Assembly (NCBI GenBank): GCA_002269645.1
Contig: NIVC01002235.1
Span: forward strand, 62,001-126,000
DNA length: 64,000 nt
Direction of reading: 5' to 3'
From: Macrostomum lignano
Taxonomy: Eukaryota
Positions 32,304 through 62,419 of this stretch are shown piece after piece (positions within the stretch are counted from its first letter, which is position 1; the number at the start of each line of letters is the position of its first letter). The notes beneath the pieces are model-generated. The model was not told the DNA's origin, did not search any database, and worked only from the letters and a program-made list of their open reading frames with translations. The translations under genes and the position numbers were made by a program.

Positions 32304-32369
32304 GTAATGATTTTAATGAGTAGTATCTAACGGATTTATTGTAAGTAGTACTTATAAAAAGTTGCCATG

Positions 32370-34450: not shown

Positions 34451-34548
34451 TATTGGTATTGGCACGCTTGTCTGTGCTCAGCAGTCAGCGGGATGGGCCG
34501 AGTTGCTGCCACCTAACAGAAAGCGGAACTTTTCATTAACCATGTCAG

Positions 34549-39210: not shown

Positions 39211-39470
39211 TAGTGGTTAGAGTGTCAAACTCAGGACTTGAAGGTCGGGGGTTCGATTTTTAACCCAACTCGGAACAATTTGTGTCATTGAGCAAGACAC
39301 TTCACTCTGCAATTGCTTCAGTTCACCCAGCTGTAAAATGTGTGCCAGCATTGCTGGGGTAATTGAGGCTGTGTGTGGCAGCCGTACGCAGCCTTCAGAT
39401 ACGCCGAGCAATAGCTGCGACTGAGCTGTCGGTCGCACATCTGGCCCAATTGTGACAGGTGCAATCAGTT
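39201..39470 (+). mobile_element. tRNA-derived SINE family A, copy 2
   Basis: Collinear with 18368-18660 except for an internal deletion of roughly 25 bp; B-box is degraded. Confidence 0.85.
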
Positions 39471-39513
39471 ATTACATGTAGTATAGTTGTTCATGCGACA
39501 TGCAAAAAGCATG

Positions 39514-39757
39514 TTAGGGGTTGTTAGGGCAAAGACGGCGGCCCGTGAAGCCTCTCTATCCGGCGCTCGCGGGTCCTTTGTGATTTCACAATAGCTCGAG
39601 TTTTGTGTCTCTTCTCAGCTCCCTAGTCGAATCTCTCCTCTCGTCTCCTCTTCTCTCTTCACCTCTCTTTTCCTCCCCTCCTCTGGCCGCAGTCATAGGC
39701 TCTCTATATACGAGCCGTATCTGGCCCTTTAGGTAAAAAAACGTTTGCCCACCCGTG
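39514..39757. mobile_element. hAT-like MITE remnant
   Basis: Right end GTTTGCCCACCCGTG resembles hAT CAGGGGTGGGCAAAC termini; left end is degenerate (taggggt..gggcaaag..ggcccg); no TSD confirmed. Confidence 0.4.
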
Positions 39758-39929
39758 GCTTGGGGTAATTAGATCAGGGTTATAGAGTTAGGGTTAGGGT
39801 TTTAAGGTTAGGCTCGGTGGTTAATTCGTGGCTGTAAAATTGCATGAATTCTTTGCATCAATTTTAGTAAGATGTTAAAAATGCAACATTTAAAGATTTT
39901 CTATAACAATATTCATTTATTCATTGCAG

Positions 39930-40388
39930 GAATATCCGGCAAATCTGTAATGGACGGAACAAATTCTTTATTTTATTATTCAGCTGAAAATACTGGAGCT
40001 GGCGGCAAGGAAGGTCGGCCGGGCGAAATTCCGGCATCGCGGCACACTTACAATGCTCCTTACTATACTTATTGTATTGGCGGTCCCGGCGCTGGTTGGC
40101 TCGGCTCGACAATCCCAGACAGCTCTTCATTCTACGATTTCGACGGCACTGGTGGCAGCAGCCGCAACGGCAACCCGCCGTGGCTGGAGACGGCGGCTAT
40201 GGAGGCGGCGGCGGCGGAGTCAAGGGGAGCGATTCTGGACGAGACTATGGCGCCAGCGGCGGCGGCGGAGGCTACAGCGGAGGCGGCGCTGGCCGGCTGT
40301 ACACTGTCTTCGGTAGCGCCTGCGTCACCATGTCTCTGGTGGCAACTTCGCGGACAGCGATGGACGAGTGATCTTTAGCAGAACTTAG
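39930..40388 (+). pseudogene. ALK/LTK-type glycine-rich domain exon with two frameshifts
   Basis: Acceptor attgcag|GA. Frame A gives GGPGAGW, frame B gives GDGGYGGGGGG...DYGASGGGGGYSGGGAG, frame C gives SGGNFADSDGRVIF-stop; this is the motif order of invertebrate ALK/LTK-like Gly-rich proteins. Confidence 0.6.
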
Positions 40389-41059
40389 CTGGGCGCGTGT
40401 AGTGGCTGAGTTCAACCTGACCCGGCCTGCTCTCATTGATATGGGGGATATGGAGAAGCTTTCGCAGGTTTGGCTACGTGAGGGACTATAGTGGGGGCAG
40501 CTATAGAATAGCTCTCGGTGGTAAACGCACCTGATTCTCGTGCCACAACCCTTGTCTGAGAAGTGTCAGAAATAAAAAAAATGTGTTTTGGGAGATCATA
40601 TGAAATTTTCGAAGATATGTGAGCACCCCCCTTTTAAGTAATGTATAGTGATGCGAAAAATACATGCAGCAGTTTCACACTGCATGCCTCTTGTTGGGTG
40701 TTGTGCACCACTCCTGTCTTCATGCACATGCGCACTTATAATATTCGAAACAGGACATATTACTCATAAATGTACTCTATTTTGCTTTTTTTATCGATTT
40801 TCACATTTTTTTCTGCATCACATGTATGTTCCAATTAATTATTTTGTTTTTATGTTTTTTTATGTTTGCCTGGCCTCCTAATTGTTTTTGTGTCGACCAG
40901 CACTGCTATAAATTCGGAGGAATACTATTTCAAAACAAAACTTTAATGCTATCCTGCAGTTGATGCCGACTATATGCGGTATAACTGTGTACAATTTTTT
41001 TACTTTTTGGCAGTCCATTCCCCAGCCTCTAACATATATCTAGCTGTTTGCTTACATAT

Positions 41060-44000
41060 CCCACTGGGAAAAACGATGTCGAAACGACGTCGTTTTGCGA
41101 TGTCGTTTCGATGTCGTGGTTTTTCCCCGCCCTACTACGTCGTTTCGACATCGTGTTTATATCGTTTCGACGTCGTATGTATGTCGTTTTGACATTGTAT
41201 GTACGTCGTTTTTACATCGTATGTATGTCGCAATGTCGTATTCAATTTCATGTAGTTTTCGCGGCCCTCGCGTGTCGTAAAATGCAATTTAATCTATCTG
41301 CTGCTGATCGATAATGTCCTGCTAAAAATTTCTAAGCCATAAAAAAACTATCATATACAAGTAGAATAGCTTAAAATGATTCTTTGCTAGATGGTAAATG
41401 TACTATTGGTTCAACTTCACTCGAGCTCCGGTATAAAATGATAGACAAGCGCACAGAATCACACAGATCATACAGACATACCATTTTGTGCCAGTACGCT
41501 ATAGCTAGTTGTAGAAAAACCGGTAAATTCAATTATTGTGCAAGTTACAAATATTGAAATGAGTAAAGGGATGTATGTAAGACAAACCATTTTTAGTATA
41601 TGGACGATATAATCGTGTTTTAATATAATGGCACACAAGGTAACAGCAGAAGATGAATTACAGAAAAGTATAATTTGTATTATTTTTCTGTAAACTACGA
41701 GCTTTTTGGTAACAGTGACAGTGATAACAGTCAACTAACTGCATAAAAAATTGAAGCATAGATAACAGGGCTCAATGAGCTATAGCGAGCATTATAGATG
41801 AACTGTGAAAACATTGCACTGCAAAATAAAGAGGAAAACTTCTTCGAAAAAGAAGAAAAATCAAATTCGATAACAGCAAACAGCGAGAACTATGTGAGAA
41901 AAAGAAGTACTGATTAAATGGCTCAATGAGCTGGCATCTAAATAATCTTAAATTAGTATTATAATCTGTAGGGTTCTTCTGTATGGTTACATCTTACAAT
42001 AGGGTTAGCCCATATTTCTAATTGGTAATTAACCAAGGTGGTGCAGTGACGTCACGACAGATTAGGAGAATCGGCAGTGAGTGACAGGTAAGGACGCTGC
42101 GGTTGATGACAGGATTTTAATAGTGAGAACAGGAGTAACAGGTGGATCTTGAAAGTGGGAAAAATCACATTGAAAAGGCATGGCGACTACAATGGCTGGG
42201 ACTTAGGGAGCATGAGGATTCGCGGTTGAAGAGGATCAAACATCTGTACTGGGTGCGAAGAGAACGATAAGGTCAAAGATGACCTGGAGGAGTGTGGCAC
42301 CTGGGCATGTCGGCTTTAAGAAGCAATGGACAGAGGCTGGATAGGTTCACTGACAGCTGTCATGTAAAGTAGGTCTGAGCCTATGAAGGATTTTGGACCA
42401 CCTCCAATGAGGGGAAAATAAGCAGTGTGCAGGTTGTTTTTTGTCACTGTTGCACTTCATTCCTCCTCCCCAGTCGCTGATTCGCATCTCGCAGGTACCA
42501 ACCAATGCGTGCCCCGATGGCTGCATCTGCCATTTGGGTACTTGGTATCACGTCTGAAAAGAAGGGTGATATGTAAAAGGACTGTTTGTAGATGACATTT
42601 TTCTTAACAAATCTCTTATTTTTAAATTTGTGTCAAAATGTATGCTTTACAAAAACAACATTGTAATACATGAAAAATTATCACTCATAAAGTAGATTAG
42701 TGGGATTAGAAAAAGCGAACTATTTGACAATGATCAATGGTTCAATAATGCTAACCTTTGTGCCTCCTATTGGTCAGCCCTTCACTTGGTAGTCCTGGCC
42801 AGTTCTATTACACATGGTCTGGTAGTCTGGAACATAGAATCAAGTTTATATTTGGTTTATAGGCCTATATTTGGAGTCCTAGTTTACTTTCATAATCTAA
42901 TTTTATTTTCATATAAAAATAATTATTTATAAGCTTAATAAATAACTTGATAAATAGATCACAATAAAATAGTTGTTGAAAGAGGAATCTAAGAGGCTAA
43001 AATCTTTTTCTTTTAAAGCTATTATTAAGTTAATATAGTTGTCAATTTTGAACTGAAATCATGCAAAAAAGTTTAATATTATAAAAGAACTTTATAATTA
43101 TATTAAGCTATTCATTCTTGTTACGAATTCAATTTTTTAAAATGACAAAAATAAGCAAAAATAGTATTCTTTTTTAATTATATCTGGCAATTTAACATAA
43201 TTCACATAGGTATTGGACTATTTGTCTAATAGGCCTAGCTATTTATTTGCTAATAGACAGATAATTCTAGGGCTAGGCTTAGTCTAAATTGAAAAGTTAA
43301 GAAAAATTAAAAAGGTATAGACCTAAAAATAATTTATAAGGAAACTTGTTCTAATTTTTTTCTTAACTAAATAATCAAATAGTCTAATATTATTGAAATT
43401 TTAAAGATGCAAAAAACAAAGCTAGGCCTACACTATATACCAACACAATAGTGCACAAATTCACCATGGCATAGTAGCACTATACTATCATTGTAGTATG
43501 CTAGATATTATATACCAAGCATATTCTAAGGTCAATAGTACACTTAAAACCAATTGAATATAGCTTTCAAATAAATTTGCTAATCTATTAGAATTAGATA
43601 TTTAAATTTAATAACATTAGCACAAGTATTATTAGGCCTAGTTATATTTATATTGTAGCATGGACAAAACTGATAGGCCTAAGGTCAATCATTAAAATTT
43701 CAATTAAAAATAAAAAAGATTCATTTAAATTTTTGATCAAGATTGATGATCAAGATTTGAAAATAGATTATAGGCCTAGCTAGTCTAGTCAGTGTAATGA
43801 TTTTAGATAACATGCACATGTTTGAAAAAAATTTACTAATAGAACCATGTACATGAAGCATGATCATATCTACTGTAAACTGAATTAACTTGTAATGTGT
43901 GCAGTAGCAGTAGCTAGGCCTAGCCAGTGTGGATTTGCACAACTAATACAATTAATACAGATCTAAATAAGTAAAACTCCTCAGCCTGCTCACTAAGAAT

Positions 44001-44380
44001 TGTTTATTGACTAAAGCATGACGTGAAATAGCAATTTCATTTTGAACTGTCACTGGAACGGAGAACTGTGATGCCGTGTGTAACCAATGTCGTTTCGACA
44101 ATGTCAGTACGTCATGCTTTGGATATGGGTTCAATTGCAAAAAATGATGTCGTTACAACATCGATACGACATAATACTTCGATGTCGTACAAAACGACTT
44201 ACTTATGACATGGAAAAAATACCCAATTTAAGCCAAATAAATACGAAAAAGGCTAAAAAAGGGACAATTATGCAATAATTAATCGTTTTTTCGATCCCAT
44301 TTTCATTTTTAAAAAAACGACATGATTTCGATATCTTGATGTCGTTTCGACGTCGTTTCGATGTACCCTTTCCCAGTGGG
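41060..44380. mobile_element. Non-autonomous CACTA/EnSpm (CMC)-like DNA element, 3321 bp
   Basis: Terminal inverted repeats CCCACTGGGAAA / TTTCCCAGTGGG, 2-bp AT duplication (41058-59 and 44381-82), subterminal GATGTCGTTTCGAC repeats at both ends; no transposase ORF. Confidence 0.75.
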
Positions 44381-46153
44381 ATGTGTATAATGCAAGCTGC
44401 AGCACAGCTGCAGCAATTCAGCGTTGGCGACGTCCGATCGACCGACGTTTCCGAATTCTATCAATGAACGTCATGATCGACAAGTAAGTGTATATGTACT
44501 TTTTACATAAACCGCGACGTTCAGCTGACGTATGAGATTCCGTTTTATATCTGTCGATGTAATGTAAAAGCTACACATTGATTATTTGTCAGCGGCGATA
44601 ATAGACGGTTGGAAAGTCGCTGACGTTGGATTGCTGTACGGGATAAATAAAGTCACAACCCTACAGCTGCTCTACATGTATGTATGAACGGCCGCGCTTG
44701 TACCAGCTGTGCATGTACCTGTACGATCAAATTTTATAGTGTACTGCATGTATGCAAACGTATCAAAGGACCTTGAAATGTACATATATGTACAGTATAC
44801 ATGTAAAGTAATATATGATTTATAGCATCTAAGCTTAAATTAGCTAATTCATTCATACATGTATGTTTACATGTATGATGCGAGGCTGGACGAATGGCAT
44901 GGACAGCGTCTACTAGCTAAATTACCGCGCCCACAAAGGCTTTGCGCATAAAATGACTTATCCAAGAGCAACGAGTGCATTGTCTAATTAAGTATACATG
45001 TACATGTATACGTTTATGAAATTATCTTTTACATTTACAGTAATTGCATCGTCCCTACCGGTTACGGTAGCTATATGGCATATATATAGCATTTATACAG
45101 TGTGTACAATGACTAGCTGTTAATTCTATACTTACACGCCGGGTACAAAATTTACAAGTCGGTGTGGGCGCATATACAGTTATGGAAGGCTGATGCGGTA
45201 AAAAATTACATTACATGCAATTACAAACACATTACATTACATTAGATTACATGCCAACAATGCGTGTATCTTGTAATAGGAATCATGACAGCTTTTATTT
45301 TCCATGGATCTGTCTTTTGAAACTTAGAGGTGGTAATAGCAACTAAAACTGTTAAACTACTCGTAGAAAGCTTTCATAAGGTAGAAAATTTGTTTTAACC
45401 ACATAAAGTTTCCAGTAATCCAGTACCCCGCTTCGAATCCATCAAACTCGCTTTTTTTCTAAATTAATCGACTTATTTTGAGCTAATGTATCTATCTACT
45501 GTCTATGTACTATTCGCTAACTACACAGTACACAATGCAGTAAGTAAATAATAGTAAATTGACAGCAATCTCTGTCAAATTCTGCCAAAGCGCGTCCGCC
45601 CTTTCATTAAAACATCGTTGCTTAATAGTCGGTCCAAAATCCAAATTTCTTTGTGGATGCCGATGGCTCGTATTATACTATATAGTGGCCCCCTGTTCAT
45701 TTTTTACAATCACCTAGTCCTAATTAATATTAAGTCTATTTATCTTAGTCTTCATTGACCTTAAAATATCATGTATAGTTGTGGGCAAAAATTGTTCCAA
45801 TCTTTATCTTAAAAATATGGTTGGACAAGGGCCTCTGTGCCTGGCTGACTGGCTAGGCCCATTGCCTTGGCTAGGCCTACCCTTAAGGCTTAGGGCCTAC
45901 ACTATGTTAAATGTGTTTATAGACATTGGTTTCTTAATCTTAATCTTAGTTGACTTCCTATCCTATCCCATCATTAGCATTGAAAATGATTCGGCATAAC
46001 TAGAACTAGATGGTTTAGTTTGTTATATTATTTCTTGTTTTGAATTTGTTCCAGCGCACATATAAATGGCTGGACAACCATTGGCTCCTATGACAATCAT
46101 TCCGGTAGGCAATTTGCGTCCACTTGCAGAGCTGTGCCAACTGGACCTCACTC

Positions 46154-46378
46154 ACAATGAGGGACCTGGCAGCCATAACAACAGATTCGCTGGCTATTAT
46201 TTGTTGGTTGGCCACCTACAGGCTGCTTTCCAATGAACAGCAGTGTGGATGCCAGCCGGGTGCTCAAATGCGTTTGCAACACCAAGAAGGTGCCCAGTTT
46301 ATTGATAACTTGGCCTGGGCCTACAAAGACTATCGTGCCCAAGTTTCTATAAGGGTGTCACACTATTATCCCATCTAA
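46154..46378 (+). pseudogene. Merlin/ISXO2(IS1595)-like transposase N-terminal Zn-ribbon relic
   Basis: CWLATYRLLSNEQQCGCQPGAQMRL...IDNLAWAY..Y...VSIR resembles the WLxxxxLLxxxxxCxxCxxxMRL...DGxxWxC..C...SIR pattern, with several Cys lost. Confidence 0.5.
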
Positions 46379-46574
46379 TTATCTTTCTCGTGACTTTGAA
46401 CTCTAATTTGAACTTTTTTGATGGTGGATTGGTGGGTCATCTTTTTTGAACTTAAAATAATATAACGAGCCATTTCTATATGTGCTTGCTAAAACAGATT
46501 TGAAACAAGAAATAATATAACAAACGAAACCATAGTGATGCCAATGATTCTTTTATATATTAGGCCCTAGTATA

Positions 46575-47925
46575 GTACCAGGGTCCAGATCGTATAGTAG
46601 TGTACACTGGAACAAGAATCCTATCTCAGCTAAATGTATGCCAGTATATGCCAAAAACAAAAAATTTCTCAAAGATATAGGCCTACACTAAAAATTCCTC
46701 CTAAAAAGGTCATTTGGTTTTCACAAGTAGAGTTTTCTTAGAAGGCTTTTATGCAAAAAGTCTTTAAATATTATTACAAATATTTTCATTTTAAACAAAC
46801 TTAAATTAAACCTACAGAAAATATGATAAATGTCTTAGCATTCATTTATACTAATTTTATTAAAAAGCAAAAATTTTATCACTGACTTTCTACACTATAT
46901 AAATTTTCCTTTATTTTATGTAAAAAGGTTAATTTACATTACAATTTTCATGCACATCATAAATTTATTCACCAAAATTGGTACGCCAAAAAATGGCATG
47001 AATTTGTGCGCTGAAATTTGTATACCAAAAATTATATGAATTTGTACGCCAACTTTGAAAGGGGTCATTTGTATGCCAGAATTTTCCAAGATACATGTAA
47101 CCTTCTGGAGTCTAGTATTAATAGCCTAGGCGGTGCCTATAGAAGTCCCCATTAGACTATGCTATTTAGAAAATTAATTTAGTAGGCCTAAAGCCTATCC
47201 CAAAGTAAAAGCTAAGATATCAATATACAAAAGGCCTATCAAATCAAGATATACATTAAATAGGCCTAGGCCTAACTAAATTCATATGTAAATTGTCTCC
47301 ATAGTCCAGATCATAGTAGGCATAGGGCCTATGTTAGAATGAAAATTCTAGGCCTAGTTTTTCTAGTTTTTTCTTTGTTAGAACCTGGTATTTGTTTTAT
47401 TTTTGTTTTCCTTATAAGTTGTATTAAAATTTTCTATTGTTTCTTTATATTTAAAAAAATAGCTCTCTTTGATATTTAACTACACTATATATACTTAGCC
47501 TAGGCCCTACCTTACACTCTATGACTCCAGATCATGTAGGCTACTAGGGTCCAGCTTGTGTAGTAGTGTATACTGGAACAAGAATCCTGTCTTAGCTAAA
47601 TATATACCAAAAACATACAATTTACCTAACATATACATAAAAACTTTCTCATAAAAAGGTCATTTGGTTTTCACTTTTCATAAGTTAAGTTTTCTAAGAA
47701 AGGATTTTGTACAAAAAGTCTTTAAAAATGAGTTTTTTTTATTTTAAACAAACTTAAATTATTAGGATTACAATTTTCATGCATAGCATGAGTTTATTTT
47801 CCAAAATTTATGCCTATGCACAAAAAATCAGCATGAATTTGTATACCAAAATTTGTATGCCAACTTTGAAAGGGGTCATTTGTCTGCTAGAATTTTTGGT
47901 ATACATGTAACCTTCTGGAGTCTAG
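46575..47925 (+). repeat. Diverged direct duplication (about 46575-47115 and 47548-47925)
   Basis: Shared collinear blocks: actggaacaagaatcct, aaaaaggtcatttggttttcac, gccaactttgaaaggggtcatttgt, catgtaaccttctggagtctag. Confidence 0.85.
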
Positions 47926-49355
47926 GCAGGCTAATATATATCCAAACTTGTAAACAAGCATTTATACAAATTTTGTGTACACTGATTTTCCACTATAAAT
48001 ACAAGTTAATAATGGCAAGAATGCTAAATAATCAACCAAGTTAATAGCCAAAAGGGGTCCTTTGTACTACACAAAAAGGTTATTTATTGTTGCAACACTA
48101 GCCTAAGAGATTTGAGAATGTGAGCATACACACAATTTTTGGCATACATTTATAACTATTAAATTTTTGTTATAATATGCACTTACATGATCTGGACTAT
48201 ATAACTGGGTCCTAACCTTGGCAATTTTTTGTATATCAACTATATAAACAAATTTTATAAATTCTATAATTCTATAATTCTATAATTCATAAATTCTATA
48301 TGCCAAGTGTATGCCAAGATTGTTAGCAAGGGCAAAATATGCCAAAAAATTCTGGCATAAACTACCTTCCAGACTTTGGAATTGTCTATTAATATATAAT
48401 TTGTCTTTTGCTTTGCTATTTAAATTTTAAGACAAGGCAATAAGTCTATCTATATTATTTTATCATCTATGCCAATGATAGTTTTTTAAAAAAATAATCA
48501 TTTTGTAATATCTTTTTTACTATCTTTTCTATAGTAGCAAGTCAATATGCTAAAAGTCTATGCCAAAAGCTAAAAGCTAAAAAGTTATGGTATAGAGGTT
48601 ATTATGGTATTATTGTAGGTTTGGGTCCACCTTGTCTGCCTAAGAGCTTTAAGTCAAGGATTAGGTTTGAGTTTGAAAATTTTACTACTTAGGATAAAAG
48701 TTTCATTGATTGCAAACAAAATAAGCTGCTACTTTAGATATTGAAACAGCTAAGTAAGAATGATAAAATTAAGATCATTGGCTATGATAAAGGGTATAGA
48801 ATTGCTGTTCTTATTTGCTGACTTGGCCTTGGAGAATATTTGCTAGACCTAGCTCCCTGCATTTTTCTGTTCTTAAAGCTCAAAAAATGCTCAAAGGAAC
48901 TCATTTCCTAACACAGAAGCCAAAGTTTACTCCTTAAACTATTTTGACACAAGTTTCATTTATGTATCTATTTTTCTTATTTGTCTATTTAATTTTACCT
49001 AACCTTGTCCTAGATATATTGATTTGAAGAATAATCTTGTCATTATTGTCATTGGGGAATAAAACTTAGGATTAAAAAGGCTTTAAAGCAATATTTTAAG
49101 GGGTACATAGGAAAAAAACATTAAACATTAAATGAGTAAAAAATAAGGACAAACAATGGATAAAAAAGGAAAAAAGTTTATTTTAAGTTATCAAAGAATC
49201 AACAAATAAAACTGAGAAAGTGCATTTAAAAATAAAACTTTTTTTGTATTTTATGAAAAGCCATGTCATACTAGCTGGAAAAATTGTGCATATATGATTG
49301 TACTTTTCCAAGGAAGTATTCGTATAAAATTATATTCCTAATTAAACTACAATGC

Positions 49356-49684
49356 ATGCGTTCATTGACCTGCTGCACACTGGATCAGCTGGGGCAACAG
49401 CAGCCCCAACAACTGCGGCAGCAATGCAAAGTTAATGAACCTGCAGTTAAACTAAATAAAGAGCATTCCATGAGTGCAGATAATTTCGATCCTGTTTGTC
49501 AAATGATTATTCATAATCGAGTTTTGACTATACTTACTCGACAACATTCGTCATTGTTTGATGCTGTAGGAGACACTGGCAGTAGCTTACCTATTCGAGC
49601 TCATTCTTGCCAAGTGGTTGCTAAGCGGATGTGCAAAGCTACTGGTTTGGAGCACTTTCTAACTCGACTGTATCCTGTTGGATT
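49356..49684 (+). CDS. Uncharacterised two-repeat-domain protein, exon 1 (5' start uncertain)
   Basis: Part of ORF 49284-49688; consensus donor TT|gtaagt at 49684/5 (phase 2); encodes most of domain copy 1. Confidence 0.7.
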
Positions 49685-49794
49685 GTAAGTGTCTGCTTGA
49701 CAAATGAAAATGGATTAAGAAAGTATTGAAACACCCACTGAAGAATTAGAAAAGACGATTAGCATCCATTGGAAGATTAAGAGAGGGTCAGCTA

Positions 49795-50110
49795 AGGTAT
49801 TAGCGTGTGCTAAAGGATTATCTAGAGGATTAGCGTGTGCTGAAGGATTATCTAGGGGGTTGGCGTGTGCAGAAGGATTACCTAGGGGATTGGCGTGTGC
49901 TGAAGGATTATCTAGGGGATTGGCGTATGTTAAAGGATTATTTAGCGGATTAGCGTGTGCTGAAGGATTATCTAGAGAATTAGTGGGTGCTGAAGGATTA
50001 TCTAGAGGATTAGTGGGTGCTGAAGGATTATCTAGAGGATTAACGGGTGCTGAAGGATTATATAGAGGATTAGCGGGTTCTAGAGGATCTAGAATCTAGA
50101 AAATCTAGAG
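49795..50110. repeat. 27-bp minisatellite TAGCGTGTGCTGAAGGATTATCTAGAG (two-domain gene intron 1)
   Basis: About 10 diverged units. Confidence 0.92.
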
Positions 50111-50200
50111 GATTATCGTAAGGGTTTTTCATCTAGAATCTTTTCTTTACTGTTGCTAAGCAAGCATCGATCGATGCTTAACTATACCGAATCTCCGCAG

Positions 50201-50553
50201 AGCCGAAGACAGATGGCTGACCAAAGCAGAGCTAGCAGATCTGCAACAATCGCTCAGACCAATCCAAGAAGCTGATGAAGAGCCCACTGTTATCAGTTCC
50301 TCAATATCGGGATCAGCATCCCTGATATCCTATTGCTCTTCTTCATCGTCAGCATCCTCCACAGCTGGATCTTCTCTATCCTCAGCGTCTTCGACATCAT
50401 CAGCAATCTCAGAGGCAATTTCCGCGCCAACACCACCAACTCAGAACCTCGCGGATTCAACTTTCGCCGAACCAATTTCTGTTTCTTCTGCTTCTTCTAA
50501 AAGTAAAGTTAATATTAAACCGGCATCGAAAACTGTAACTGTTGGCAGTAAAA
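50201..50553 (+). CDS. Two-repeat-domain protein exon 2 (not in ORF track)
   Basis: ctccgcag|A acceptor and A|gtgaga donor; stop-free (L)AEDRWLTKAELADLQQSL followed by a Ser-rich linker. Confidence 0.75.
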
Positions 50554-50649
50554 GTGAGAATCTTTTATTGCATTGTAGCTTTTTTAACTTATGTCAGTCA
50601 GTTGTCATTTAATAACTTGCATTCTTTATTTTCTCTATTTTGTTTTAAG

Positions 50650-50712
50650 ATTCCAATTCCGCAACCCAAGAACGGTGCAAGCGGCGATGCAAGCGTTTCA
50701 GACATTTTACAG
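50650..50712 (+). CDS. Two-repeat-domain protein exon 3 (63 nt, phase 1/1)
   Basis: ttgttttaag|AT and G|gtaatt; encodes NSNSATQERCKRRCKRFRHFT (basic stretch). Confidence 0.65.
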
Positions 50713-50784
50713 GTAATTAAATCGAGTTAGTGTACTTGGCAATGATTCATCAAAGTGGGAACAATCTACTGCCACAAATATTTG

Positions 50785-51220
50785 AGGTAGGCGCCATTTT
50801 ATTTGAGGTTGGCGCCATTCCATTTTAGGTAGGCGCCATTTCATTTGAGTTAGGCGCCATTTTATTTGAGGTTGGCGCCATTCCATTTTAGGTAGGCGCC
50901 ATTTCATTTGAGTTAGGCGCCATTTTATTTGAGGTAGGCGCCATTTCATTTGAGGTAGGCGCCATTTTATTTGAGGTAGGCGCCATTTCATTCGAGGTAG
51001 GCGCCATTTCATTTGAGGTTGGCGCCATTTTATTTGAGGTTGGCGCCATTTCATTCGAGGTAGGCGCCATTTTATTTGAGGTTAGTGCCATTTTATTTGA
51101 GGTTGGCGCCATTTCATTTGAGATAGGCGCCATTTCATTCGAGGTAGGCGCCATTTTATTTGAGGTTGGCGCCATTCCATTTTAGGTAGGCGCCATTTCA
51201 TTTGAGGTAGGCGCCATTTA
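50785..51220. repeat. 21-bp minisatellite GAGGTAGGCGCCATTTTATTT (two-domain gene intron 3)
   Basis: About 20 units. Confidence 0.95.
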
Positions 51221-51331
51221 AATTGAAAATTTAGTTATTGCTATGCACATATTAAACCCCTATTTACAGAATTCATTGCTTAGCTAAAGTCTAATTCTGT
51301 ATTAAATAAATTTTGCCCATGTGCTGCGCAG

Positions 51332-51566
51332 TTCGAGCACCGGATTGTTACGATCGAGTTTGCCATCGGATTGTTCAGCACCAGATTTTGCACTCCAAGT
51401 CGGCTCAGTTGAAGCAGCAGCAGCACATGCAAAAACATCTGAGCGCCCAGAACGATTCTGCAAGTCGGACTCAGCTGTATCGGTGCACGACTGCCGTGGC
51501 AGTGGCAAAGCGCTCGCTGCCCAGCGCGGTAGCGCAGGTTCTGGTTCGGCACTATCCGCTGGGAGT
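51332..51566 (+). CDS. Two-repeat-domain protein exon 4
   Basis: ctgcgcag|TT and GT|gtgagt; CYDRVCHRIVQHQIL...VAKR...VLVRHYPLG is domain copy 2. Confidence 0.75.
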
Positions 51567-51609
51567 GTGAGTGGCTGATGGCTTTTGGATGTATGGCTAT
51601 CGCTTGGAT

Positions 51610-52060
51610 CCTCGGTAGCTGGGCCAGCCTCCCAGATCCTCAGTTGCTGGGCCAGCCTCCCAGATCCTCATTTGCTGGGCCAGCTTACCAGATCTCCAGT
51701 TGCTGGGCCAGCCTCCCAGATCCTCAGTTGCTGGGCCAGCCTCCCAGATCCTCAGTTGCTGGGCCAGCCTCCCAGATCCTCAGTAGCTGGGCCAGCCTCC
51801 CAGATCCCCAGTAGCTGGGCCAGCCTCCCAGATCCCCAGTAGCTGGGCCAGCCTCCCCGATCCCCAGTAGCTTGGCCAGCCTCCCAGATCCCCAGTAGCT
51901 GGGCCAGCCTCCCAGAGTGTCAGTTGGTGGGCCAGCCTCCCAGAGTGTCAGTTGCTGGGCCAGCCTCCCAGATCCTCAGTTGCTGGGCCAGCCTCCCAGA
52001 GTGTCAGTTGGTGGGGCAGCCTCTGAGATCCCCAGTTGTTAGGCCAGCCTCCCAGATCTC
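51610..52060. repeat. 28-bp satellite CTGGGCCAGCCTCCCAGATCCTCAGTTG, array 1 (two-domain gene intron 4)
   Basis: Same family at 52795-53380, 58163-58218 and 62649-64000. Confidence 0.96.
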
Positions 52061-52108
52061 CACGCATGGCCATTAACGCACTTTACACTCAATGTTTGCC
52101 CCTTGCAG

Positions 52109-52211
52109 TCTAAAAGAGCAATGGATGTCGGAAGCCGAGTTTGCCAAACTGAAGCTTCTGGAAGCAAAGCGAGCAAATTTATTAAACAGCAAAGATTCTG
52201 CAAACCCTTGA
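52109..52211 (+). CDS. Two-repeat-domain protein terminal exon 5 (not in ORF track)
   Basis: ccttgcag|T acceptor; (V)LKEQWMSEAEFAKLKLLEAKRANLLNSKDSANP-TGA, homologous to the start of exon 2. Confidence 0.75.
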
Positions 52212-52794
52212 TACAACCATTGTTTTCAATCCGCGAAGTTCACCAGATAGTGCTGTAATACTCCATATTTAGTCATTCATACTTTCAATTATTAAATACT
52301 GCTGAAGTACTTGGCATTGTTCTACTTTTGTGTGACTTTTCAAAAATATCGAAGCAAGCTTGGTTTGTTTTATTGGAGGAAAATAAACAAACTGCATGTT
52401 TTTCCGTGTTTGTAGAAAGTAATATGATTTTTCGCTCAACTGTCTAACGCCAGTTACTGACACTAGATACGATATCAGCCTGTGTTGCACCTCTTTGTTC
52501 TATTTCTTAACTCTTGTGTGTGCGTGACTGTTTGTTTTAAAAATGTATCCGTCCGTTTGTTGTTGCACTTTTAATGGTCTCATATGTCAAATTAGTTCTA
52601 TTCTAATTGTTTTAATGAATTGGTTAAAATTTGGTTGCATTTTAAAAATTTTTGCTTCTTTAGTTTAACTGTTAGGTATATGATAGGCTTACTTAAACTA
52701 GAATTCTTTTACTGGTGTGTCTAGTCCTCAATAACGTTATTATTTGTTTCTGATTTGAATTTTGAACTAAAAACTTCAACCAATGTAACAGCAA

Positions 52795-53380
52795 TCTCAG
52801 TTGCTGGGCCAGCCTCCCAGATCCTCAGTTGCTGGGCCAGCCTCCCAGATCCTCAGTTGCTGGGCCAGCCTCCCAGATCCTCAGTTGCTGGGCCAGCCTC
52901 CCAGAGTGTCAGTTGCTGGGCCAGCCTCCCAGAGTGTCAGTTGCTGGGCCAGCCTCCCAGAGTGTCAGTTGCTGGGCCAGCCTCCCAGAGTGTCAGTTGG
53001 TGGGCCAGCCTCCCAGAGTGTCAGTTGGTGGGCCAGCCTCCCAGAGTGTCAGTTGGTGGGCCAGCCTCCCAGAGTGTCAGTTGGTGGGCCAGCCTCCCAG
53101 AGTGTCAGTTGCTGGGCCAGCCTCCCAGATCCTCAGTTGCTGGGCCAGCCTCCCAGAGTGTCAGTTGGTGGGCCAGCCTCCCAGATCCTCAGTTGCTGGG
53201 CCAGCCTCCCAGATCCTCAGTTGCTGGGCCAGCCTCCCAGATCCTCAGTTGCTGGGCCAGCCTCCCAGATCCTCAGTTGCTGGGCCAGCCTCCCAGATCC
53301 TCAGTTGCTGGGCCAGCCTCCCAGAGTGTCAGTTGCTGGGCCAGCCTCCCAGAGTGTCAGTTGGTGGGCCAGCCTTCAAA
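52795..53380. repeat. 28-bp satellite, array 2
   Basis: Mixed ATCCTCAG and AGTGTCAG variants. Confidence 0.96.
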
Positions 53381-53849
53381 TTTGTCTGGGCAGAAAGGTG
53401 CGTGTATATACTGCTTAAAAATTGCACTACTTACTACTGACAATGTTAGTACATCGCAGACTTATAATTGTTTTGTACTTTTTTGGCCAAATCTAATTTT
53501 TTTTGCGCTTGAGTTTTACTGCTTTCAGTTTTTTGCTTGCTTTTATCGTATCGCAATGGCAAAGCACTTTTGTTGTCAGTGAGCCCTGAATTTGCACTGA
53601 TAGTTTGCTTGACTATTATTGTCATCACTTAAAATCGTTTCCTTAATTGAACGCTATAAAGTTTATTTGTTGGCTTCTGTAATTTTTAGTGGTTTCTAAT
53701 CAACATTTTAACCTGATTTGGCTAATCGCTCAGGACTTAATACTGTATTTAGCTCAATTTTTCAATTAAAAATATTAAATTTTAGCTCTAAATCATTTTT
53801 AGTAGATAGAAAGTAACGGCTGTAAGTTGTGCTTGTTTTTATTCGATAT

Positions 53850-55130
53850 TTCTGACCCCCATTCTTCCCTCTCTTCCCCTCTCTTCCCCATTCTTCCCCC
53901 TTCCCCATTCTTCCCCTCTTCCCTATTCTTCCTTCTCTTCCCTATTCTTCCCCATTCTCCCCCTCTTCCCTATTCTTCCCCATTCTTCCCCTCTCTTCCT
54001 TCTCTTCCCTATTCTTCCCCATTCTTCCCCTCTCTTCCTTCTCTTCCCTATTCTTCCCCATTCTTCCCCTCTCTTCCCCGTTCTTCCCCCCTTCCCCATT
54101 CTTCCCCTCTCTTCCCCATTCTTCCCCTCTCTTCCCCATTCTTCCCCCCTTCCCCATTCTTCCCCTCTCTTCCCCATTCTTCCCCTCTCTTCCCCATTCT
54201 TCCCCTCTCTTCCCCATTCTTCCCCTCTTCCCTATTCTTCCCCTCTCTCCCCCATTCTTCCCAATTCTTCCCCTCTCTCCCCCATTCTTCCTAATTCTTC
54301 CCCTCTCTCCCCCTCTCTTCCCCATTCTTCCCCCCTTCCCCATTCTTCCCCTCTCTTCCCCATTCTTCCCCTCTCTTCCCCATTCTTCCCCTCTCTTCCC
54401 CATTCTTCCCCTCTCTTCCCCATTCTTCCCCCCTTCCCCATTCTTCCCCTCTCTTCCCCATTCTTCCCCTCTCTTCCCCATTCTTCCCCCTTCCCCATTC
54501 TTCCCCTCTCTTCCCCATTCTTCCCCTCTCTTCCCCATTCTTCCCCTCTTCCCTATTCTTCCCCATTCTCCCCCTCTTCCCTATTCTTCCTTCTCTTCCC
54601 TATTCTTCCCCATTCTTCCCCTCTCTTCCCCATTCTTCCCCTCTCTTCCCCATTCTTCCCCTCTCTTCCCCATTCTTCCCCTCTCTTCCCCATTCTTCCC
54701 CCCTTCCCTATTCTTCCCCCCTCTTCCCTATTCTTCCTTCTCTTCCCTATTCTTCCCCATTCTTCCCCTCTCTTCCCCTCTCTTCCCCATTCTTCCCCCC
54801 TTCCCCATTCTTCCCCTCTCTTCCCCATTCTTCCCCTCTCTTCCCCATTCTTCCCCTCTCTTCCCCATTCTTCCCCTCTTCCCTATTCTTCCCCTCTCTC
54901 CCCCATTCTTCCCAATTCTTCCCCTCTCTCCCCCATTCTTCCTAATTCTTCCCCTCTCTCCCCCTCTCTTCCCCATTCTTCCCTATTCCCCCTCTCTTCC
55001 CCATTCTTCCCTATTCTTCCCCTCTCTCACCAATTCTTCCCCTCTCTCCCCATTCTTCCCAATTTCCCTCTCTTCTTCCCCTCTCTTCTCGATTCTTCCT
55101 CCTTTTTTCAAATTTTCCCAATTTCACTCT
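53850..55130. repeat. Polypyrimidine 21-bp repeat TTCTTCCCCTCTCTTCCCCA
   Basis: About 1.3 kb almost free of G on the + strand. Confidence 0.96.
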
Positions 55131-55749
55131 TTAATTCCCATTCCCTTTTTGAAAAGGAGTTTCCATCTAGCATTCAGCTTCAATTGCAAGTTTCTGCTAG
55201 ACCTGCAACTTAACTTAATTCGCTATTCATTTCGACCCAGCTCTGAGAAATGTGTAGTCATTTAGTTTATATTCATTTATTTACAAATATTATTCTAAGC
55301 TTGTAAAATCGTTAATGCTGTACAAATATGCTTTTTTGACAAGAAATGTCTTGCTTCCATTTATTAGTTCATATTTATTTTTTTCAATTTTCCTAATTTC
55401 TATTTGCATGCCAGTTGCTTTGATTGCGAGATAACCGCTTGTAAAACTGAATGTTTGTTTGTTATAATTGAATTTGTGTCAAAGTTTCTAATTTTGCTTG
55501 ACTTTTTTCTATTCCTTTTTTAAGCATAACAACGAGAGCTGTCCATGATTCTGACTGTTAGCTTGCAAATATTATTAATATTTAATTACTTTAATTTATT
55601 ACATAACTGTTTTCTGGGTTTGTCAATTGTTATAAATATAACATTTAGCAAACCTTGCTGTGCTAAACCGTTTCTCTTCCCTTGAAACTGATTCTTCAAA
55701 TGATACTGTATTTTTGATATCTGTGTTCATCTTTTTGAGACCAATTTGT

Positions 55750-56880
55750 GTCTCCAGCTTGTCTCTAGATTGTGTCTTCAGCTTGTCTCTAGATTGTGTC
55801 TCCAGCTCGTCTCTAGATTGTATCTTCAGCTTGTCTCTAGATTGTGTCTTCAGCTTGTCTCTAGATTGTGTCTTCAGCTTGTATCTAGATTGTGTCTTCA
55901 GCTTGTCTCTAGATTGTGTCTTCAGCTTGTCTCTAGATTGTGTCTTCAGCTTGTCTCTAGATTGTGTCTCCAGCTCGTCTCTAGATTGTATCTTCAGCTT
56001 GTCTCTAGATTGTGTCTTCAGCTTGTCTCTAGATTGTGTCTTCAGCTTGTATCTAGATTGTGTCTTCAGCTTGTCTCTAGATTGTGTCTTCAGCTTGTCT
56101 CTAGATTGTGTCTCCAGCTCGTCTCTAGATTGTGTCTTCAGCCTGTCTCTAGATTGTGTCTCCAGCTCGTCTCTAGATTGTGTCTTCAGCTTGTCTCTAG
56201 ATTGTGTCTTCAGCTTGTCTCTAGATTGTGTCTTCAGCTTGTCTCTAGATTGTGTCTTCAGCTTGTCTCTAGATTGTGTCTTCAGCTTGTCTCTAGATTG
56301 TGTCTTCAGCTTGTCTCTAGATTGTGTCTTCAGCTTGTCTCTAGATTGTGTCTTCAGCTTGTCTCTAGATTGTGTCTTCAGCTTGTCTCTAGATTGTGTC
56401 TCCAGCTCGTATCTAGATTGTGTCTTCAGCTTGTCTCTAGATTGTGTCTTCAGCTTGTATCTAGATTGTGTCTTCAGCTTGTCTCTAGATTGTGTCTCCA
56501 GCTCGTCTCTAGATTGTGTCTTCAGCTTGTCTCTAGATTGTGTCTCCAGCTCGTCTCTAGATTGTGTCTTCAGCTTGTCTCTAGATTGTGTCTTCAGCTT
56601 GTATCTAGATTGTGTCTTCAGCTTGTCTCTAGATTGTGTCTTCAGCTTGTCTCTAGATTGTATCCAGATTGTCTCTAGATTGTGTCTTCAGCTTGTCTCT
56701 AGATTGTGTCTTCAGCTTGTATCTAGATTGTGTCTTCAGCTTGTCTCTAGATTTTGTCTTCAGCTTGTCTCTAGATTGTGTCTCCTGATGTGTCTCTAGA
56801 TTGTATCCAGATTGTCTCTAGATTGTGTCTCCAACTTGCCTCTAGATTGTGTCTCCAAGTTGTCTTTAGATTGTGTCTCT
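55750..56880. repeat. 24-bp minisatellite AGCTTGTCTCTAGATTGTGTCTTC
   Basis: About 45 homogeneous units. Confidence 0.97.
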
Positions 56881-57376
56881 AGATTGTCTATAGATTTTTT
56901 CCGCAGACTGTCTTTAAATTGTCTACAATTTGTTTCAAAAAATCTTGTGCACATGCATTGTTTTAACTATGAAGTAATAAAATGTGTCTGCAGATTGTGT
57001 CCAGATTTGATGTTCCTTGTTGCTGTGGAGGGTAGCCGTGACAGTCAGTTACTTCATGCTGCTTACTGTTGTTAAAACTGCAGCAATTTTTTTTACTTCC
57101 GACAAGACAAGACCACCTTGTTGAAATCGAAATTGAAACTCCATTTTCAAATGACTAACTAATTAGCTTCCAGTCCAGATGCTATTTTTAGAGCTCCACG
57201 ATTTTAGACTTGGGGGGAAAGTACCGCGGCCATAGACATGATTTTCATCATCTTCGGTACAGTTTAGCCGCTGTGAATTAGTGAACTACAGACTGCTTAT
57301 TGCTCTCTTAATGTTTTAATTTATAAAAGCAGAGCCATTCAAGAGTTGAAGCAGCAACAGCAGCTACTTGAAAAAG

Positions 57377-57829
57377 ATGTCTTCTGGCCAGCAATCTCCA
57401 TCCCCTGCCGTAGCCGCCGCTATCAAGCAGATTCGAATACAAACTGGCGTAGTCAAACGCCTAGTCAAAGAGGTTCGAATGTACCAAACCGAATCTGCCA
57501 GTCTGCTAGCCGAACTTGAGCAGCTGAAAGTGAAGCAGGTGTCTTCTTCTTCGGCTAGCGAAGAAGCCGAGCATCGACTTCGCAAACGGCAGGAGGTGCT
57601 GCGCGAATCCCAGATGATGGTGCCGGATACGGAGAGACGTTTAAGCACCGCCAAAGAACGCTTAGACTCCCTGCTTCAGCAGCACAAAGGTCTGTGCGAC
57701 TCCGACCCGGTGTATCTGGAGGCTGTCGAAGAGTTGAAGAAATTGTCTGGCAATGATGAGGCAGCCTCTGCCGATGCTAGCGCTGGTAAAGCTGCCGAGC
57801 TGCCGCAGAAAGAAGCTGGAGACTGTTGA
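57377..57829 (+). CDS. TBCA: Tubulin-specific chaperone A (cofactor A), intronless
   Basis: IKQIRIQTGVVKRLVKE and QEVLRESQMMVPDTERRL match human TBCA VRQIKIKTGVVKRLVKE and AEILQESRMMIPDCQRRL; AATAAA at 58075-58080. Confidence 0.93.
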   Translation: MSSGQQSPSPAVAAAIKQIRIQTGVVKRLVKEVRMYQTESASLLAELEQLKVKQVSSSSASEEAEHRLRKRQEVLRESQMMVPDTERRLSTAKERLDSLLQQHKGLCDSDPVYLEAVEELKKLSGNDEAASADASAGKAAELPQKEAGDC

Positions 57830-61298: not shown

Positions 61299-62419
61299 CT
61301 ACATTTCTTTTGCCTTGCCAGCAACCCGGATGCTGTTGATGTGGGTTTCCGGTGCTGGACCCACTCGTAGTACTCCAAACTTCTCGCTCGTTGCCCTTCC
61401 GAGAATGGTGACGCCCGGGTCTTGCACTACTATGAAGTCCACCACTTCCCCGAGACCGCTGATTTTGACAAGGAGCTCAGCTCTGCCGGCGGTTGCCAGT
61501 GGTGTCTTCGAGTCGAACGGGTACAACTGCCGTGCTGATCGAAGCAGTGGCGTTTTGGTTGTTTTGAGATCTTGAAAGGTCACCCGGTCGATGACGTTGC
61601 AGCTGGCGCCACTATCGATAATTGCCTCGATCCGCTTACCGTTGATAGAGATGCTCATCAGCGGCAGCTTGGTCTCAGTTAGGCAGAATACCTCCCCTTC
61701 ATCGCTTGGTGACTTGCTGGATTCTTCCAGGTGTTGCTGCTGTTTCACCGCAGCGGTAAACTTGGACTTGCTGCCAGGCTTGTAGGATGGTCCATCTTGT
61801 TGCTCACCTCTGGTGTGCCTCATCGAGTTGACTGTCTCGTCGTGGCGTGACTCCATGGCTGCTGACTGGTGGCTCGCGGCTTCGAAGGCTCGGCACAGCT
61901 GCAGTGCATCCTGCAAGTTGATGCTGGCGGTCTGCAGTAGCCGTCGTCTGAGTTGCTCGGAGTTGCATCCAGCGACAATCTGGTCGCGGATGAGGGAGTC
62001 GCGCAGATTGTCAAAGTCGCAGCTTTCTGCAGCCTTGTACAGCTGGCTGACCCATGCGTCGATGCTCTGGCCTGGTTGCTGCGTGCAGTTTCGGAAATAC
62101 AACTCGTATTTTGAGAACGACACGCACCTGCGGCCTGTAAAGTGGTCCTTGAAAGCCTTGATGAGTTCTTCGACGGTGTTTCCGCTGTTGGTCAGCTGCT
62201 TGTATAGCTCAGCCAGCTCCCTCCCGCCTGTGTAGAACAGGACTTGTCTCTGCTGGGCTGGATCCTTGACTCCGGAAGCGTGGATGAAACACACCGCGAC
62301 GACCAATCTTCCCACCTTGATGACAGGGCGTGTGCTTCTTGGTTGACGTTGAGTTTCTTTGGTGGAGGCAGTTGCAGTTGAACGACCGTGCCTGTCTGGC
62401 CACTGTTTTCAATAGACAT
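61299..62419 (-). pseudogene. Gypsy gag-protease (frameshift near the 5' end)
   Basis: ORFs 62192-62419 and 61299-62315; gag-like LRDSLIRDQIVAG and aspartic protease IIDSGASCNVI. Confidence 0.85.

What the first reader, a model, noticed from the sequence alone, without database searches (positions are those of the whole stretch)
49356..52211. Hidden 5-exon gene encoding two copies of an unidentified domain, each split by the same phase-2 intron
Splicing gives a 1083-nt CDS (360 aa) with all phases matching. Copy 1 reads DNFDPVCQMIIHNRVL...VAKR...FLTRLYPVG^LAEDRWLTKAELADL and copy 2 reads DCYDRVCHRIVQHQIL...VAKR...VLVRHYPLG^VLKEQWMSEAEFAKL. The shared pattern is D-x-[FY]-D-x-V-C-x2-I, VAKR, L-x-R-x-Y-P-x-G-x5-W-x3-A-E-x-A-x-L. 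The intron falls in the same codon position in both copies, which shows an exon-pair duplication. The copies are joined by a Ser-rich linker and a basic KRRCKRFR mini-exon (possible NLS). Two exons are absent from the ORF track, so automated annotation could miss the gene. I recognise no family; copy 1 has only a loose resemblance to an OTU-like fold lacking the catalytic Cys. This is the best candidate in the window for an undescribed domain family.
Basis: partly seen in the sequence, partly recalled or inferred. Interest (0 to 1): 0.75.

Follow-up and report, generated by a model that had tools for sequence, protein, structure and literature searches.

The report
Annotated flatworm orphan gene, internal duplication
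The five-exon gene is real and carries an ancient internal duplication, but it is already annotated in GenBank as a hypothetical protein of the flatworm Macrostomum lignano, and it is one of the thousands of lineage-restricted genes of unknown function in that genome.

Summary
The five exons join through GT..AG introns into a 1083-nt ORF. The two ~90-aa copies are 29% identical (pairwise E 3e-10). Each is split after the second base of the codon that follows Y-P-x-G. The window is Macrostomum lignano contig NIVC01002235.1.

The gene is not hidden. That annotation was built from RNA-seq. The GenBank CDS begins at 49374, so the ATG at 49356 is unsupported. Met39 (49470) is the more likely start.

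Identity between the copies is 49/61/35% at codon positions 1/2/3. This shows long-term protein-level constraint.

No relative was found in Pfam, in PDB sequences, or in a profile search of 1.84 billion representative proteins. The OTU resemblance and UniProt's automatic 'Ras-GEF' name are not reproduced. AlphaFold2 models are low-confidence and all-helical, with a disordered Ser-rich linker.

It is a lineage-restricted orphan protein, and 35-44% of M. lignano genes fall in that class. A nuclear binding role is only an inference. Interest is low.

The parts
49323..49329 (+). TATAAAA, a candidate TATA box about 45-50 nt upstream of the annotated CDS/transcript start
   Evidence: the only TATAAA in 49200-49400. 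Its promoter role is inferred, not tested.
49356..49684 (+). The GenBank CDS (5' partial) begins at 49374. In-frame ATGs lie at 49356 (Met1, outside the annotated CDS) and 49470 (Met39, the likelier start). An out-of-frame ATG at 49352 overlaps Met1. Short uORF ATGs lie at 49424 and 49435.
49479..49684 (+). Copy 1 of the ~90-aa module, upstream part (residues 42-110, DNFDPVCQMI...VAKR...LTRLYPVG)
49685..50200 (+). Intron 1 (516 nt, phase 2). 54% of it is a 30-bp minisatellite (49799-50075).
50201..50553 (+). Exon 2. It holds the downstream part of copy 1 (50201-50246, LAEDRWLTKAELADL) and then the Ser/Thr-rich, predicted disordered linker.
50554..50649 (+). Intron 2 (96 nt, phase 1)
50650..50712 (+). 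Exon 3, a 63-nt phase 1-1 mini-exon encoding NSNSATQERCKRRCKRFRHFT. It is a basic, NLS-like patch. Skipping this exon would keep the frame.
   Evidence: The exon is present in PAA59748.1.
50713..51331 (+). Intron 3 (619 nt, phase 1). 72% of it is a 21-bp minisatellite (50780-51226).
51332..51566 (+). Exon 4. It holds the upstream part of copy 2 (from 51343; DCYDRVCHRI...VAKR...LVRHYPLG).
51567..52108 (+). Intron 4 (542 nt, phase 2, at the position homologous to intron 1). 83% of it is a 28-bp minisatellite (51607-52058).
52109..52211 (+). Exon 5. It holds the downstream part of copy 2 (52109-52154, VLKEQWMSEAEFAKL), a C-terminal tail, and the TGA stop at 52209-52211.
52291..52387 (+). Candidate polyadenylation signals ATTAAA (52291-52296) and AATAAA (52382-52387), 80-175 nt after the stop
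   Evidence: Their use is inferred.

Best explanation
This is a genuine, transcribed, already annotated protein-coding gene of the flatworm Macrostomum lignano: BOX15_Mlig028338g1, GenBank PAA59748.1, 'hypothetical protein'. It has no detectable relative outside its own sequence cluster. It contains two ~90-aa predicted all-helical modules. These arose by an old tandem duplication of a two-exon unit whose intron already existed, which is why both copies carry the same phase-2 intron after Y-P-x-G. Both copies have since been kept under protein-level purifying selection. A ~100-aa Ser/Thr-rich disordered linker and a 21-aa basic mini-exon join them. Shown here: the gene structure, agreement with a transcript-derived annotation, the duplication, the coding constraint, and the absence of detectable homologues. 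Inferred, with low confidence (about 0.25): the protein is basic overall (pI 9.5) and has a KRRCKRFR patch containing K-R-x-R. It is therefore most likely a nuclear protein in which the two helical modules act as an intramolecular pseudo-dimer, offering two similar binding surfaces for nucleic acid or for a partner protein. The Ser-rich linker would serve as a flexible spacer that can be phosphorylated. The confidence value given (0.8) applies to the shown part, not to the functional guess.
For:: the five exons give an intact 1083-nt ORF with canonical GT..AG sites. PAA59748.1 (354 aa) equals the spliced product from residue 7 to the end; the window equals NIVC01002235.1:62001-126000 with 0 mismatches over 22,838 nt, and the GenBank gene spans window 49374-52211. 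(PMC5730564): the GenBank annotation of Mlig_3_7 is the RNA-seq-based 'coregenes' transcriptome, with ORFs called by TransDecoder; the copies are 29% identical, E 3e-10; identity at codon positions 1/2/3 is 49/61/35%, and pN 0.44 is below pS 0.74 (saturated). That is the pattern expected of coding constraint and not of neutral decay; every retained intron gives an early stop; both models are helical in both copies, and the linker is disordered; pI values and composition; no homologue found.
Against: No expression, localisation or knock-down data were found for this gene. The ID is absent from the main text of the searched library and from the held supplements of four M. lignano papers. The structure models have pLDDT 44-48, so even 'all-helical' is provisional. 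The functional guess rests only on charge and a short basic motif. The GenBank model is flagged partial at the 5' end, so the N-terminus, and possibly upstream exons, are unresolved. 'No relative' is limited by the databases. No proteomes of other Macrostomum species appear to be in them, since the 90% cluster holds only the UniProt and GenBank entries.
Confidence: 0.8

Rival explanations
1. The two modules are extremely diverged members of an already described family, so the domain is not new. Candidates are the Cdc25-homology Ras-GEF domain suggested by UniProt's automatic name, the OTU fold suggested by the reader, or some other helical domain.
For:: UniProt/UniRef names A0A1I8HPZ9 'Ras-GEF domain-containing protein'. 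By eye, the first ~25 residues of copy 1 resemble the start of the SOS1 catalytic domain. My recalled SOS1 sequence was verified against PDB. One search lists a precomputed 'faint' PF26014 SH3_AEBP2_C hit. A two-sequence profile has little power for remote homology.
Against:: no RasGEF, OTU or SH3_AEBP2_C hit in Pfam even at E<=10; hhalign of the two-copy profile against the SOS1 catalytic domain gives probability 0.08%. BLASTP gives E 5.2 on an unrelated segment. Each module is ~90 aa, against >200 aa for a Ras-GEF catalytic domain. Copy 2 lacks the local resemblance. The predicted all-alpha architecture disagrees with OTU (alpha/beta) and with SH3 (beta). Foldseek finds nothing below E 4.
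Confidence: 0.1
2. The annotated model is only the 3' part of a larger gene. Upstream exons are missing, and the true protein carries further domains N-terminal to copy 1.
For:: PAA59748.1 is flagged 'partial' and starts without Met at window 49374; the UniProt model from the older assembly reads through upstream sequence (KLQFKRSL...) without a Met. The frame is open upstream to the stop at 49272. A pyrimidine-rich AG at ~49310-49312 could serve as an acceptor (read from the sequence).
Against:: the GenBank annotation has no other gene in the 10 kb upstream (window 39374-49373); a TATAAAA sits at 49323, about 45-50 nt before the annotated start, as expected for a promoter; there is no ORF >=120 aa between 40.4 and 49.3 kb. 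An in-frame Met39 directly precedes copy 1.
Confidence: 0.12
3. The transcript is non-coding, and the 360-codon ORF is fortuitous (a TransDecoder false positive).
For: There is no homologue anywhere. The structure predictions are low-confidence. Upstream ATGs or uORFs precede both candidate start codons. No peptide evidence is available.
Against: An ORF that stays open across four splice junctions, while every intron carries early stops, is unlikely by chance. The two copies retain similarity at the amino-acid level, with identity ordered by codon position as 2 > 1 > 3 (61/49/35%). Neutral non-coding decay would not produce that ordering.
Confidence: 0.05

Closest known systems
GenBank PAA59748.1 (BOX15_Mlig028338g1, hypothetical protein, partial; Macrostomum lignano Mlig_3_7) and UniProt A0A1I8HPZ9
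   Same: It is the same gene. A0A1I8HPZ9 covers exons 1-2 with the same first junction.
   Different: The GenBank CDS starts at 49374, not 49356. Neither record notes the internal duplication. UniProt's 'Ras-GEF' name is not reproduced.
Macrostomum-specific (taxonomically restricted) genes as a class, e.g. those catalogued by Grudniewska et al. 2018 (PMC5816591)
   Same: It has no homologue in human, Schmidtea or Schistosoma, or anywhere else in the libraries searched. It is transcribed and carries an ORF. 35-44.5% of M. lignano genes have this status.
   Different: This one has a clear, old internal exon-pair duplication that gives direct evidence of protein-level constraint. Most orphans lack such evidence. 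Its ID was not found in the germline or neoblast lists held for that paper.
Cdc25-homology Ras-GEF catalytic domain (Pfam PF00617; e.g. SOS1)
   Same: Both are predicted or known to be all-helical. There is a local by-eye resemblance over ~25 residues at the start of copy 1. UniProt's automatic name points to this family.
   Different: No Pfam hit. hhalign probability 0.08%. BLASTP E 5.2. The module is 90 aa instead of >200 aa. The resemblance is absent from copy 2.
OTU deubiquitinase fold
   Same: Nothing that could be verified.
   Different: No Pfam OTU hit at E<=10. There is no conserved Cys/His catalytic arrangement. The models are all-alpha. No OTU appears among the Foldseek matches.

Membership tests
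Internal tandem duplication of an exon pair | Significant sequence similarity between two adjacent segments of one protein | tested here: met
   26/91 identical, E 3e-10; each copy scores 177-186 bits against the joint profile, but this follows by construction.
Internal tandem duplication of an exon pair | An intron at the homologous position and in the same phase in both copies | tested here: met
   both introns interrupt the codon directly after YP[VL]G, after its second base (phase 2), in an ungapped stretch of the alignment.
Protein-coding gene under constraint | More divergence at third codon positions than at first and second positions between the duplicated copies | tested here: met
   identity 49% / 61% / 35% at positions 1/2/3 over 83 aligned codons. 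pN is 0.44 and pS is 0.74.
Protein-coding gene under constraint | Transcript evidence for the junctions | tested here: met
   This evidence is indirect. The RNA-seq-derived GenBank model has the identical protein across all four junctions. Raw reads were not examined.
Taxonomically restricted (orphan) gene | No detectable homologue outside the lineage | tested here: met
   an exhaustive HMMER profile search of 1.84 billion representatives finds only the gene's own cluster plus P0003. One search shows P0003 is an artefact: 8 identical repeats scoring 6-9 bits each over the least conserved profile columns; word-indexed searches find only the gene's own cluster. Limit: other Macrostomum species are apparently not in the libraries.
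OTU domain | Match to the OTU profile, with catalytic Cys and His in an alpha/beta fold | tested here: not met
   no hit at E<=10; the models are all-helical (low confidence); no OTU structure is matched.
Ras-GEF (Cdc25-homology) domain | Match to a Ras-GEF profile or sequence over a catalytic domain of ~200+ aa | tested here: not met
   no PF00617 or PF00618 hit; hhalign probability 0.08% against SOS1. BLASTP E 5.2. The PROSITE profile PS50009, the probable source of UniProt's name, could not be run.
SH3_AEBP2_C (PF26014) | A reproducible Pfam match and a beta-rich SH3-like fold | tested here: not met
   One search lists only a precomputed 'faint' hit. One search gives nothing at E<=10. The models contain no strands.
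Classical nuclear localisation signal | A basic cluster matching K-[KR]-x-[KR] that drives nuclear import | not testable with these tools
   The sequence KRRCKRFR contains K-R-F-R. The import function would need a tagged-protein experiment.

The most novel reading that the evidence does not exclude
The ~90-aa module (D-x-[FY]-D-x-V-C ... VAKR ... L-x-R-x-Y-P-x-G-x5-W-x3-A-E-x-A-x-L) is a genuinely new helical domain confined to Macrostomum or Macrostomorpha. It would have its own fold and a specific nuclear binding function, for example in the germline, where lineage-specific genes are over-represented in this species.
Probability: 0.3. Interest if true: 0.35.

Novelty: new member of a known kind. 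Interest (0 to 1): 0.2.

Why it matters
The practical value is mostly corrective.

- The gene is already in GenBank with the same junctions.
- UniProt's 'Ras-GEF domain-containing protein' label for its fragment looks like a false automatic name.
- The GenBank model's open 5' end probably resolves to Met39.

The internal duplication is a neat case. The two copies act as each other's outgroup, so the duplication gives evidence of coding constraint for a gene that has no homologues. This supports the view that at least some Macrostomum-specific ORFs encode real proteins.

Beyond that, the gene is one of roughly ten thousand lineage-restricted genes in this genome. Nothing yet points to an unusual mechanism.

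Tried and rejected
1. Pfam hmmscan of the full protein and of each copy at E<=10. The only hits were sub-threshold noise for copy 2: DUF4554, TetR_C_2 and TPR_Rlf.

2. Word-indexed homology searches.
   - The full protein was swamped by the Ser-rich linker.
   - The two-copy alignment returned nothing. It did not even return the gene's own cluster, so that result is uninformative.
   - The two copies without the linker returned only the gene's own cluster.

3. Exhaustive profile search. The single foreign hit, P0003, is a 1574-aa protein of eight near-identical zinc-finger-containing repeats. I rejected it because its 70 bits are a sum of 6-9-bit matches to profile columns 29-73, which contain none of the signature motifs.

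4. PDB sequence searches with the profile and with copy 1. The best hits were septin-3 (E 0.6) and McbR (E 0.87), which I treat as chance.

5. AlphaFold2 on copy 1 with a 3-row alignment (pLDDT 48) and on the full GenBank protein alone (pLDDT 44). Both are too poor for fold assignment.

6. The Ras-GEF lead from UniProt's name. I verified my recalled SOS1 catalytic-domain sequence against PDB. hhalign and BLASTP against it were both negative.

7. Transposon origin. There are no LTR or TIR repeats flanking the gene, no other copy in the window, and no TE domain hit.

8. Expression or phenotype data. 'Mlig028338' is absent from the full-text library and from the held supplements of PMC5730564, PMC7336406, PMC12896417 and PMC5816591.

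9. Exact look-up of the UniProt fragment on contigs. Nothing is on record.

I worked round this with exon-wise rows (alignment A2) and with P0002.
Full report
**What is in the sequence**

- The exons are 49356-49684, 50201-50553, 50650-50712, 51332-51566 and 52109-52211.
- The donors are GTAAGT, GTGAGA, GTAATT and GTGAGT.
- The acceptors are pyrimidine-rich, ending CAG, AAG, CAG and CAG.
- The ORF is 1083 nt (360 codons plus TGA).
- Intron phases are 2, 1, 1 and 2.
- If any intron is retained, a stop follows within 1-19 codons.

Three of the four introns consist mostly of minisatellite arrays with 30-, 21- and 28-bp units. These fill 54%, 72% and 83% of introns 1, 3 and 4.

**The duplication**

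Copy 1 (residues 42-125) and copy 2 (residues 253-342) align with 26/91 identities and E 3e-10 in a pairwise BLASTP. The stretch L-x-R-x-Y-P-x-G-x5-W-x3-A-E-x-A-x-L aligns without gaps. In both copies the intron interrupts the codon immediately after the Gly, after its second base (TT|A Leu110; GT|T Val327). A tandem duplication of a two-exon unit with a pre-existing intron is therefore the straightforward reading.

The duplication is old. Over 83 aligned codons, synonymous differences are saturated (pS 0.74) while pN is 0.44. Nucleotide identity is 49%, 61% and 35% at codon positions 1, 2 and 3, against about 25% expected by chance. The ordering 2 > 1 > 3 is what protein-level purifying selection produces. 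Neutral decay of a non-coding duplicate would not produce it. This is the best evidence available here that the ORF is translated.

**Where it comes from and whether it is 'hidden'**

The first protein search returned a 231-aa Macrostomum lignano entry, UniProt A0A1I8HPZ9. It covers exons 1-2 with the same junction. Its 90%-identity cluster also contains GenBank PAA59748.1, 'hypothetical protein BOX15_Mlig028338g1, partial', 354 aa.

The encoding contig is NIVC01002235.1 of assembly GCA_002269645.1. The fetched 22,838 nt match window 39374-62211 without a mismatch, and the annotated gene spans window 49374-52211.

According to Wudarski et al. 2017 (PMC5730564), the GenBank annotation of this assembly is a filtered, genome-guided transcriptome. 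It was built with StringTie, TACO, a de novo assembly and RNA-seq-derived boundaries, and ORFs were called by TransDecoder. The junctions therefore already have transcript-derived support, and automated annotation did not miss the gene.

**The 5' end**

- From my knowledge of TransDecoder, a 5'-partial call means the ORF runs open to the first bases of the transcript. The assembled transcript therefore probably starts at ~49372-49374.
- A TATAAAA at 49323-49329 fits a start site in that neighbourhood.
- The ATG at 49356 is overlapped by an out-of-frame ATG at 49352.
- In the UniProt fragment from the older assembly, the residues at that position read FK instead of CM, so there is no Met there.

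Together these make Met39 (49470, MSADNFDP...) the likelier initiator. It sits directly before copy 1 and would give a 322-aa protein. Two tiny uORFs (49424, 49435) would then lie in the leader. This is inference. 5'-end data would settle it.

Candidate poly(A) signals ATTAAA (52291) and AATAAA (52382) follow the stop.

No other gene is annotated in the 10 kb upstream. The next gene downstream is a single-exon TBCA homologue at window ~57377-57829.

**What the protein is**

No Pfam family matches the full protein or copy 1 at E<=10. Copy 2 gives only sub-threshold noise. It was searched by HMMER against 1.84 billion representative proteins. Only the gene's own cluster and one foreign protein, P0003, came back.

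P0003 is not a relative. It has eight near-identical repeats that each score 6-9 bits against the least conserved central columns of the profile and cover none of the signature motifs. The 70 bits are a sum over those repeats. A further word-indexed search without the linker again found only the gene's own cluster. PDB sequence searches gave nothing below E 0.6.

AlphaFold2 gave low-confidence models: pLDDT 48 for copy 1 with the shallow alignment, and 44 for the full protein alone. Both predict four to five helices per copy and no structure in the Ser-rich linker. Foldseek on such a model is not informative and returned nothing below E 4.

The OTU idea has no support. There is no profile hit, no catalytic arrangement, and the prediction is all-alpha.

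UniProt's name 'Ras-GEF domain-containing protein' prompted a specific test. The first ~25 residues of copy 1 look a little like the start of the SOS1 catalytic domain. I confirmed my recalled SOS1 sequence against PDB. However, hhalign of the two-copy profile against it gives probability 0.08%, BLASTP gives E 5.2 elsewhere in the sequence, and Pfam RasGEF does not hit. I treat the name as an automatic false positive. The caveat is that I could not run the PROSITE profile that probably produced it.

A precomputed 'faint' SH3_AEBP2_C flag was not reproduced either.

**How it most likely works**

The following are shown: a transcribed five-exon gene, two constrained helical modules, a ~100-residue linker with 42% Ser+Thr, and a 21-residue basic mini-exon (pI 11.4) containing KRRCKRFR. 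Overall pI is 9.5. Copy 2 is basic (pI 9.7) and copy 1 is near neutral.

My best guess is inferred from these features, with a probability of about 0.25. It is a nuclear protein whose two modules form an intramolecular pseudo-dimer that binds nucleic acid or a partner protein. The linker would serve as a flexible spacer that can be phosphorylated. The mini-exon is phase 1-1, so skipping it would keep the frame and remove the basic patch. This is a possibility only, with no evidence for it.

No expression or phenotype data were found for Mlig028338.

**Rivals**

- A very diverged known family: about 0.1.
- A longer gene with missing 5' exons: about 0.12.
- A non-coding transcript with a fortuitous ORF: about 0.05. 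The codon-position pattern argues against it.
- A transposon origin. I found nothing for it: no flanking LTR or TIR repeats, no second copy in the window, and no TE domain.

**Novelty and verdict**

The gene is already public as a hypothetical protein, and its lack of relatives is normal for this organism. Grudniewska et al. 2018 count 35-44.5% of M. lignano genes as Macrostomum-specific (PMC5816591).

The 'family' at present consists of two copies within one protein. The internal duplication usefully demonstrates coding constraint, and the annotation notes (start codon, dubious Ras-GEF name) are worth recording. Nothing here would surprise a specialist. Interest is 0.2.

Noticed in passing
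window 1-64000; e.g. 12328-14331, 32367-34451, 3722-5241, 53857-55099, 55746-56896: The window is packed with minisatellite arrays (units of 10-52 bp, up to 80 copies). Many of the long mechanical 'ORFs' are just translations of these arrays, for example 12533-14317 (-), 15581-17113 (+), 52755-53582 (+) and 55660-56799 (+). This fits the 15% simple/tandem repeat content reported for the genome.
   Followed up: partly
window 51607-52058, 52797-53375, 62649-64000: The same 28-bp unit (CTCAGTTGCTGGGCCAGCCTCCCAGATC and variants) forms three separate arrays. One is inside intron 4 of the gene, one lies 0.6 kb past its stop codon, and one is at the window's end.
   Followed up: no
window 2675-3721 (+) and 17188-18369 (+): Exon-sized ORFs match the Pfam BLTP1_M (E 2.6e-8) and BLTP1_C (E 1.7e-14) regions. 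A large bridge-like lipid-transfer protein (BLTP1/KIAA1109-type) gene therefore occupies much of the first third of the window on the + strand.
   Followed up: no
window 18368-18440 (+): There is a tRNA-Ala (anticodon CGC) gene: Rfam 42.8 bits, also found by ARAGORN. It starts exactly where the BLTP1_C-matching ORF ends, so it is presumably in an intron of that gene or just beside an exon.
   Followed up: partly
window ~57377-57829 (+): The next annotated gene downstream is a single-exon gene for a 150-aa tubulin-binding cofactor A (PF02970 TBCA) homologue (ORF 57368-57829).
   Followed up: no
window 61299-62315 (-): This ORF has weak retroviral-type aspartyl protease matches (Asp_protease_2 E 6e-5, RVP, gag-asp_proteas; all just below the Pfam cut-offs). 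It is probably a retroelement remnant.
   Followed up: no
window 28935-31235 (+): This 766-aa ORF has a single sub-threshold TPR match near its C-terminus (TPR_12 E 1.6e-6). Its identity was not established.
   Followed up: no
window 46010-46533 and 46576-47900: A 55-nt inverted repeat pair (82% complementary, 414 nt apart, MITE-like) and a diverged tandem duplication with a period of ~0.8-0.97 kb (four collinear matches, 86-94% identical) lie 1.5-3 kb upstream of the gene.
   Followed up: no
database records for window 49374-50553: UniProt A0A1I8HPZ9 (exons 1-2 only) is named 'Ras-GEF domain-containing protein'. No Ras-GEF similarity could be reproduced, so this is probably an automatic mis-annotation.
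   Followed up: yes
P0003 (library protein, not in the window): A 1574-aa protein with eight near-identical ~154-aa repeats reached E 1.4e-14 against a two-copy profile purely by summing 6-9-bit repeat matches. This shows how whole-sequence E-values can mislead for internally repetitive targets.
   Followed up: yes
The search for homologous proteins with alignment A1: The alignment-based word-indexed search returned no hit at all, not even the 100%-identical database entry that the single-sequence searches and the exhaustive search found. That negative result carries no weight.
   Followed up: partly
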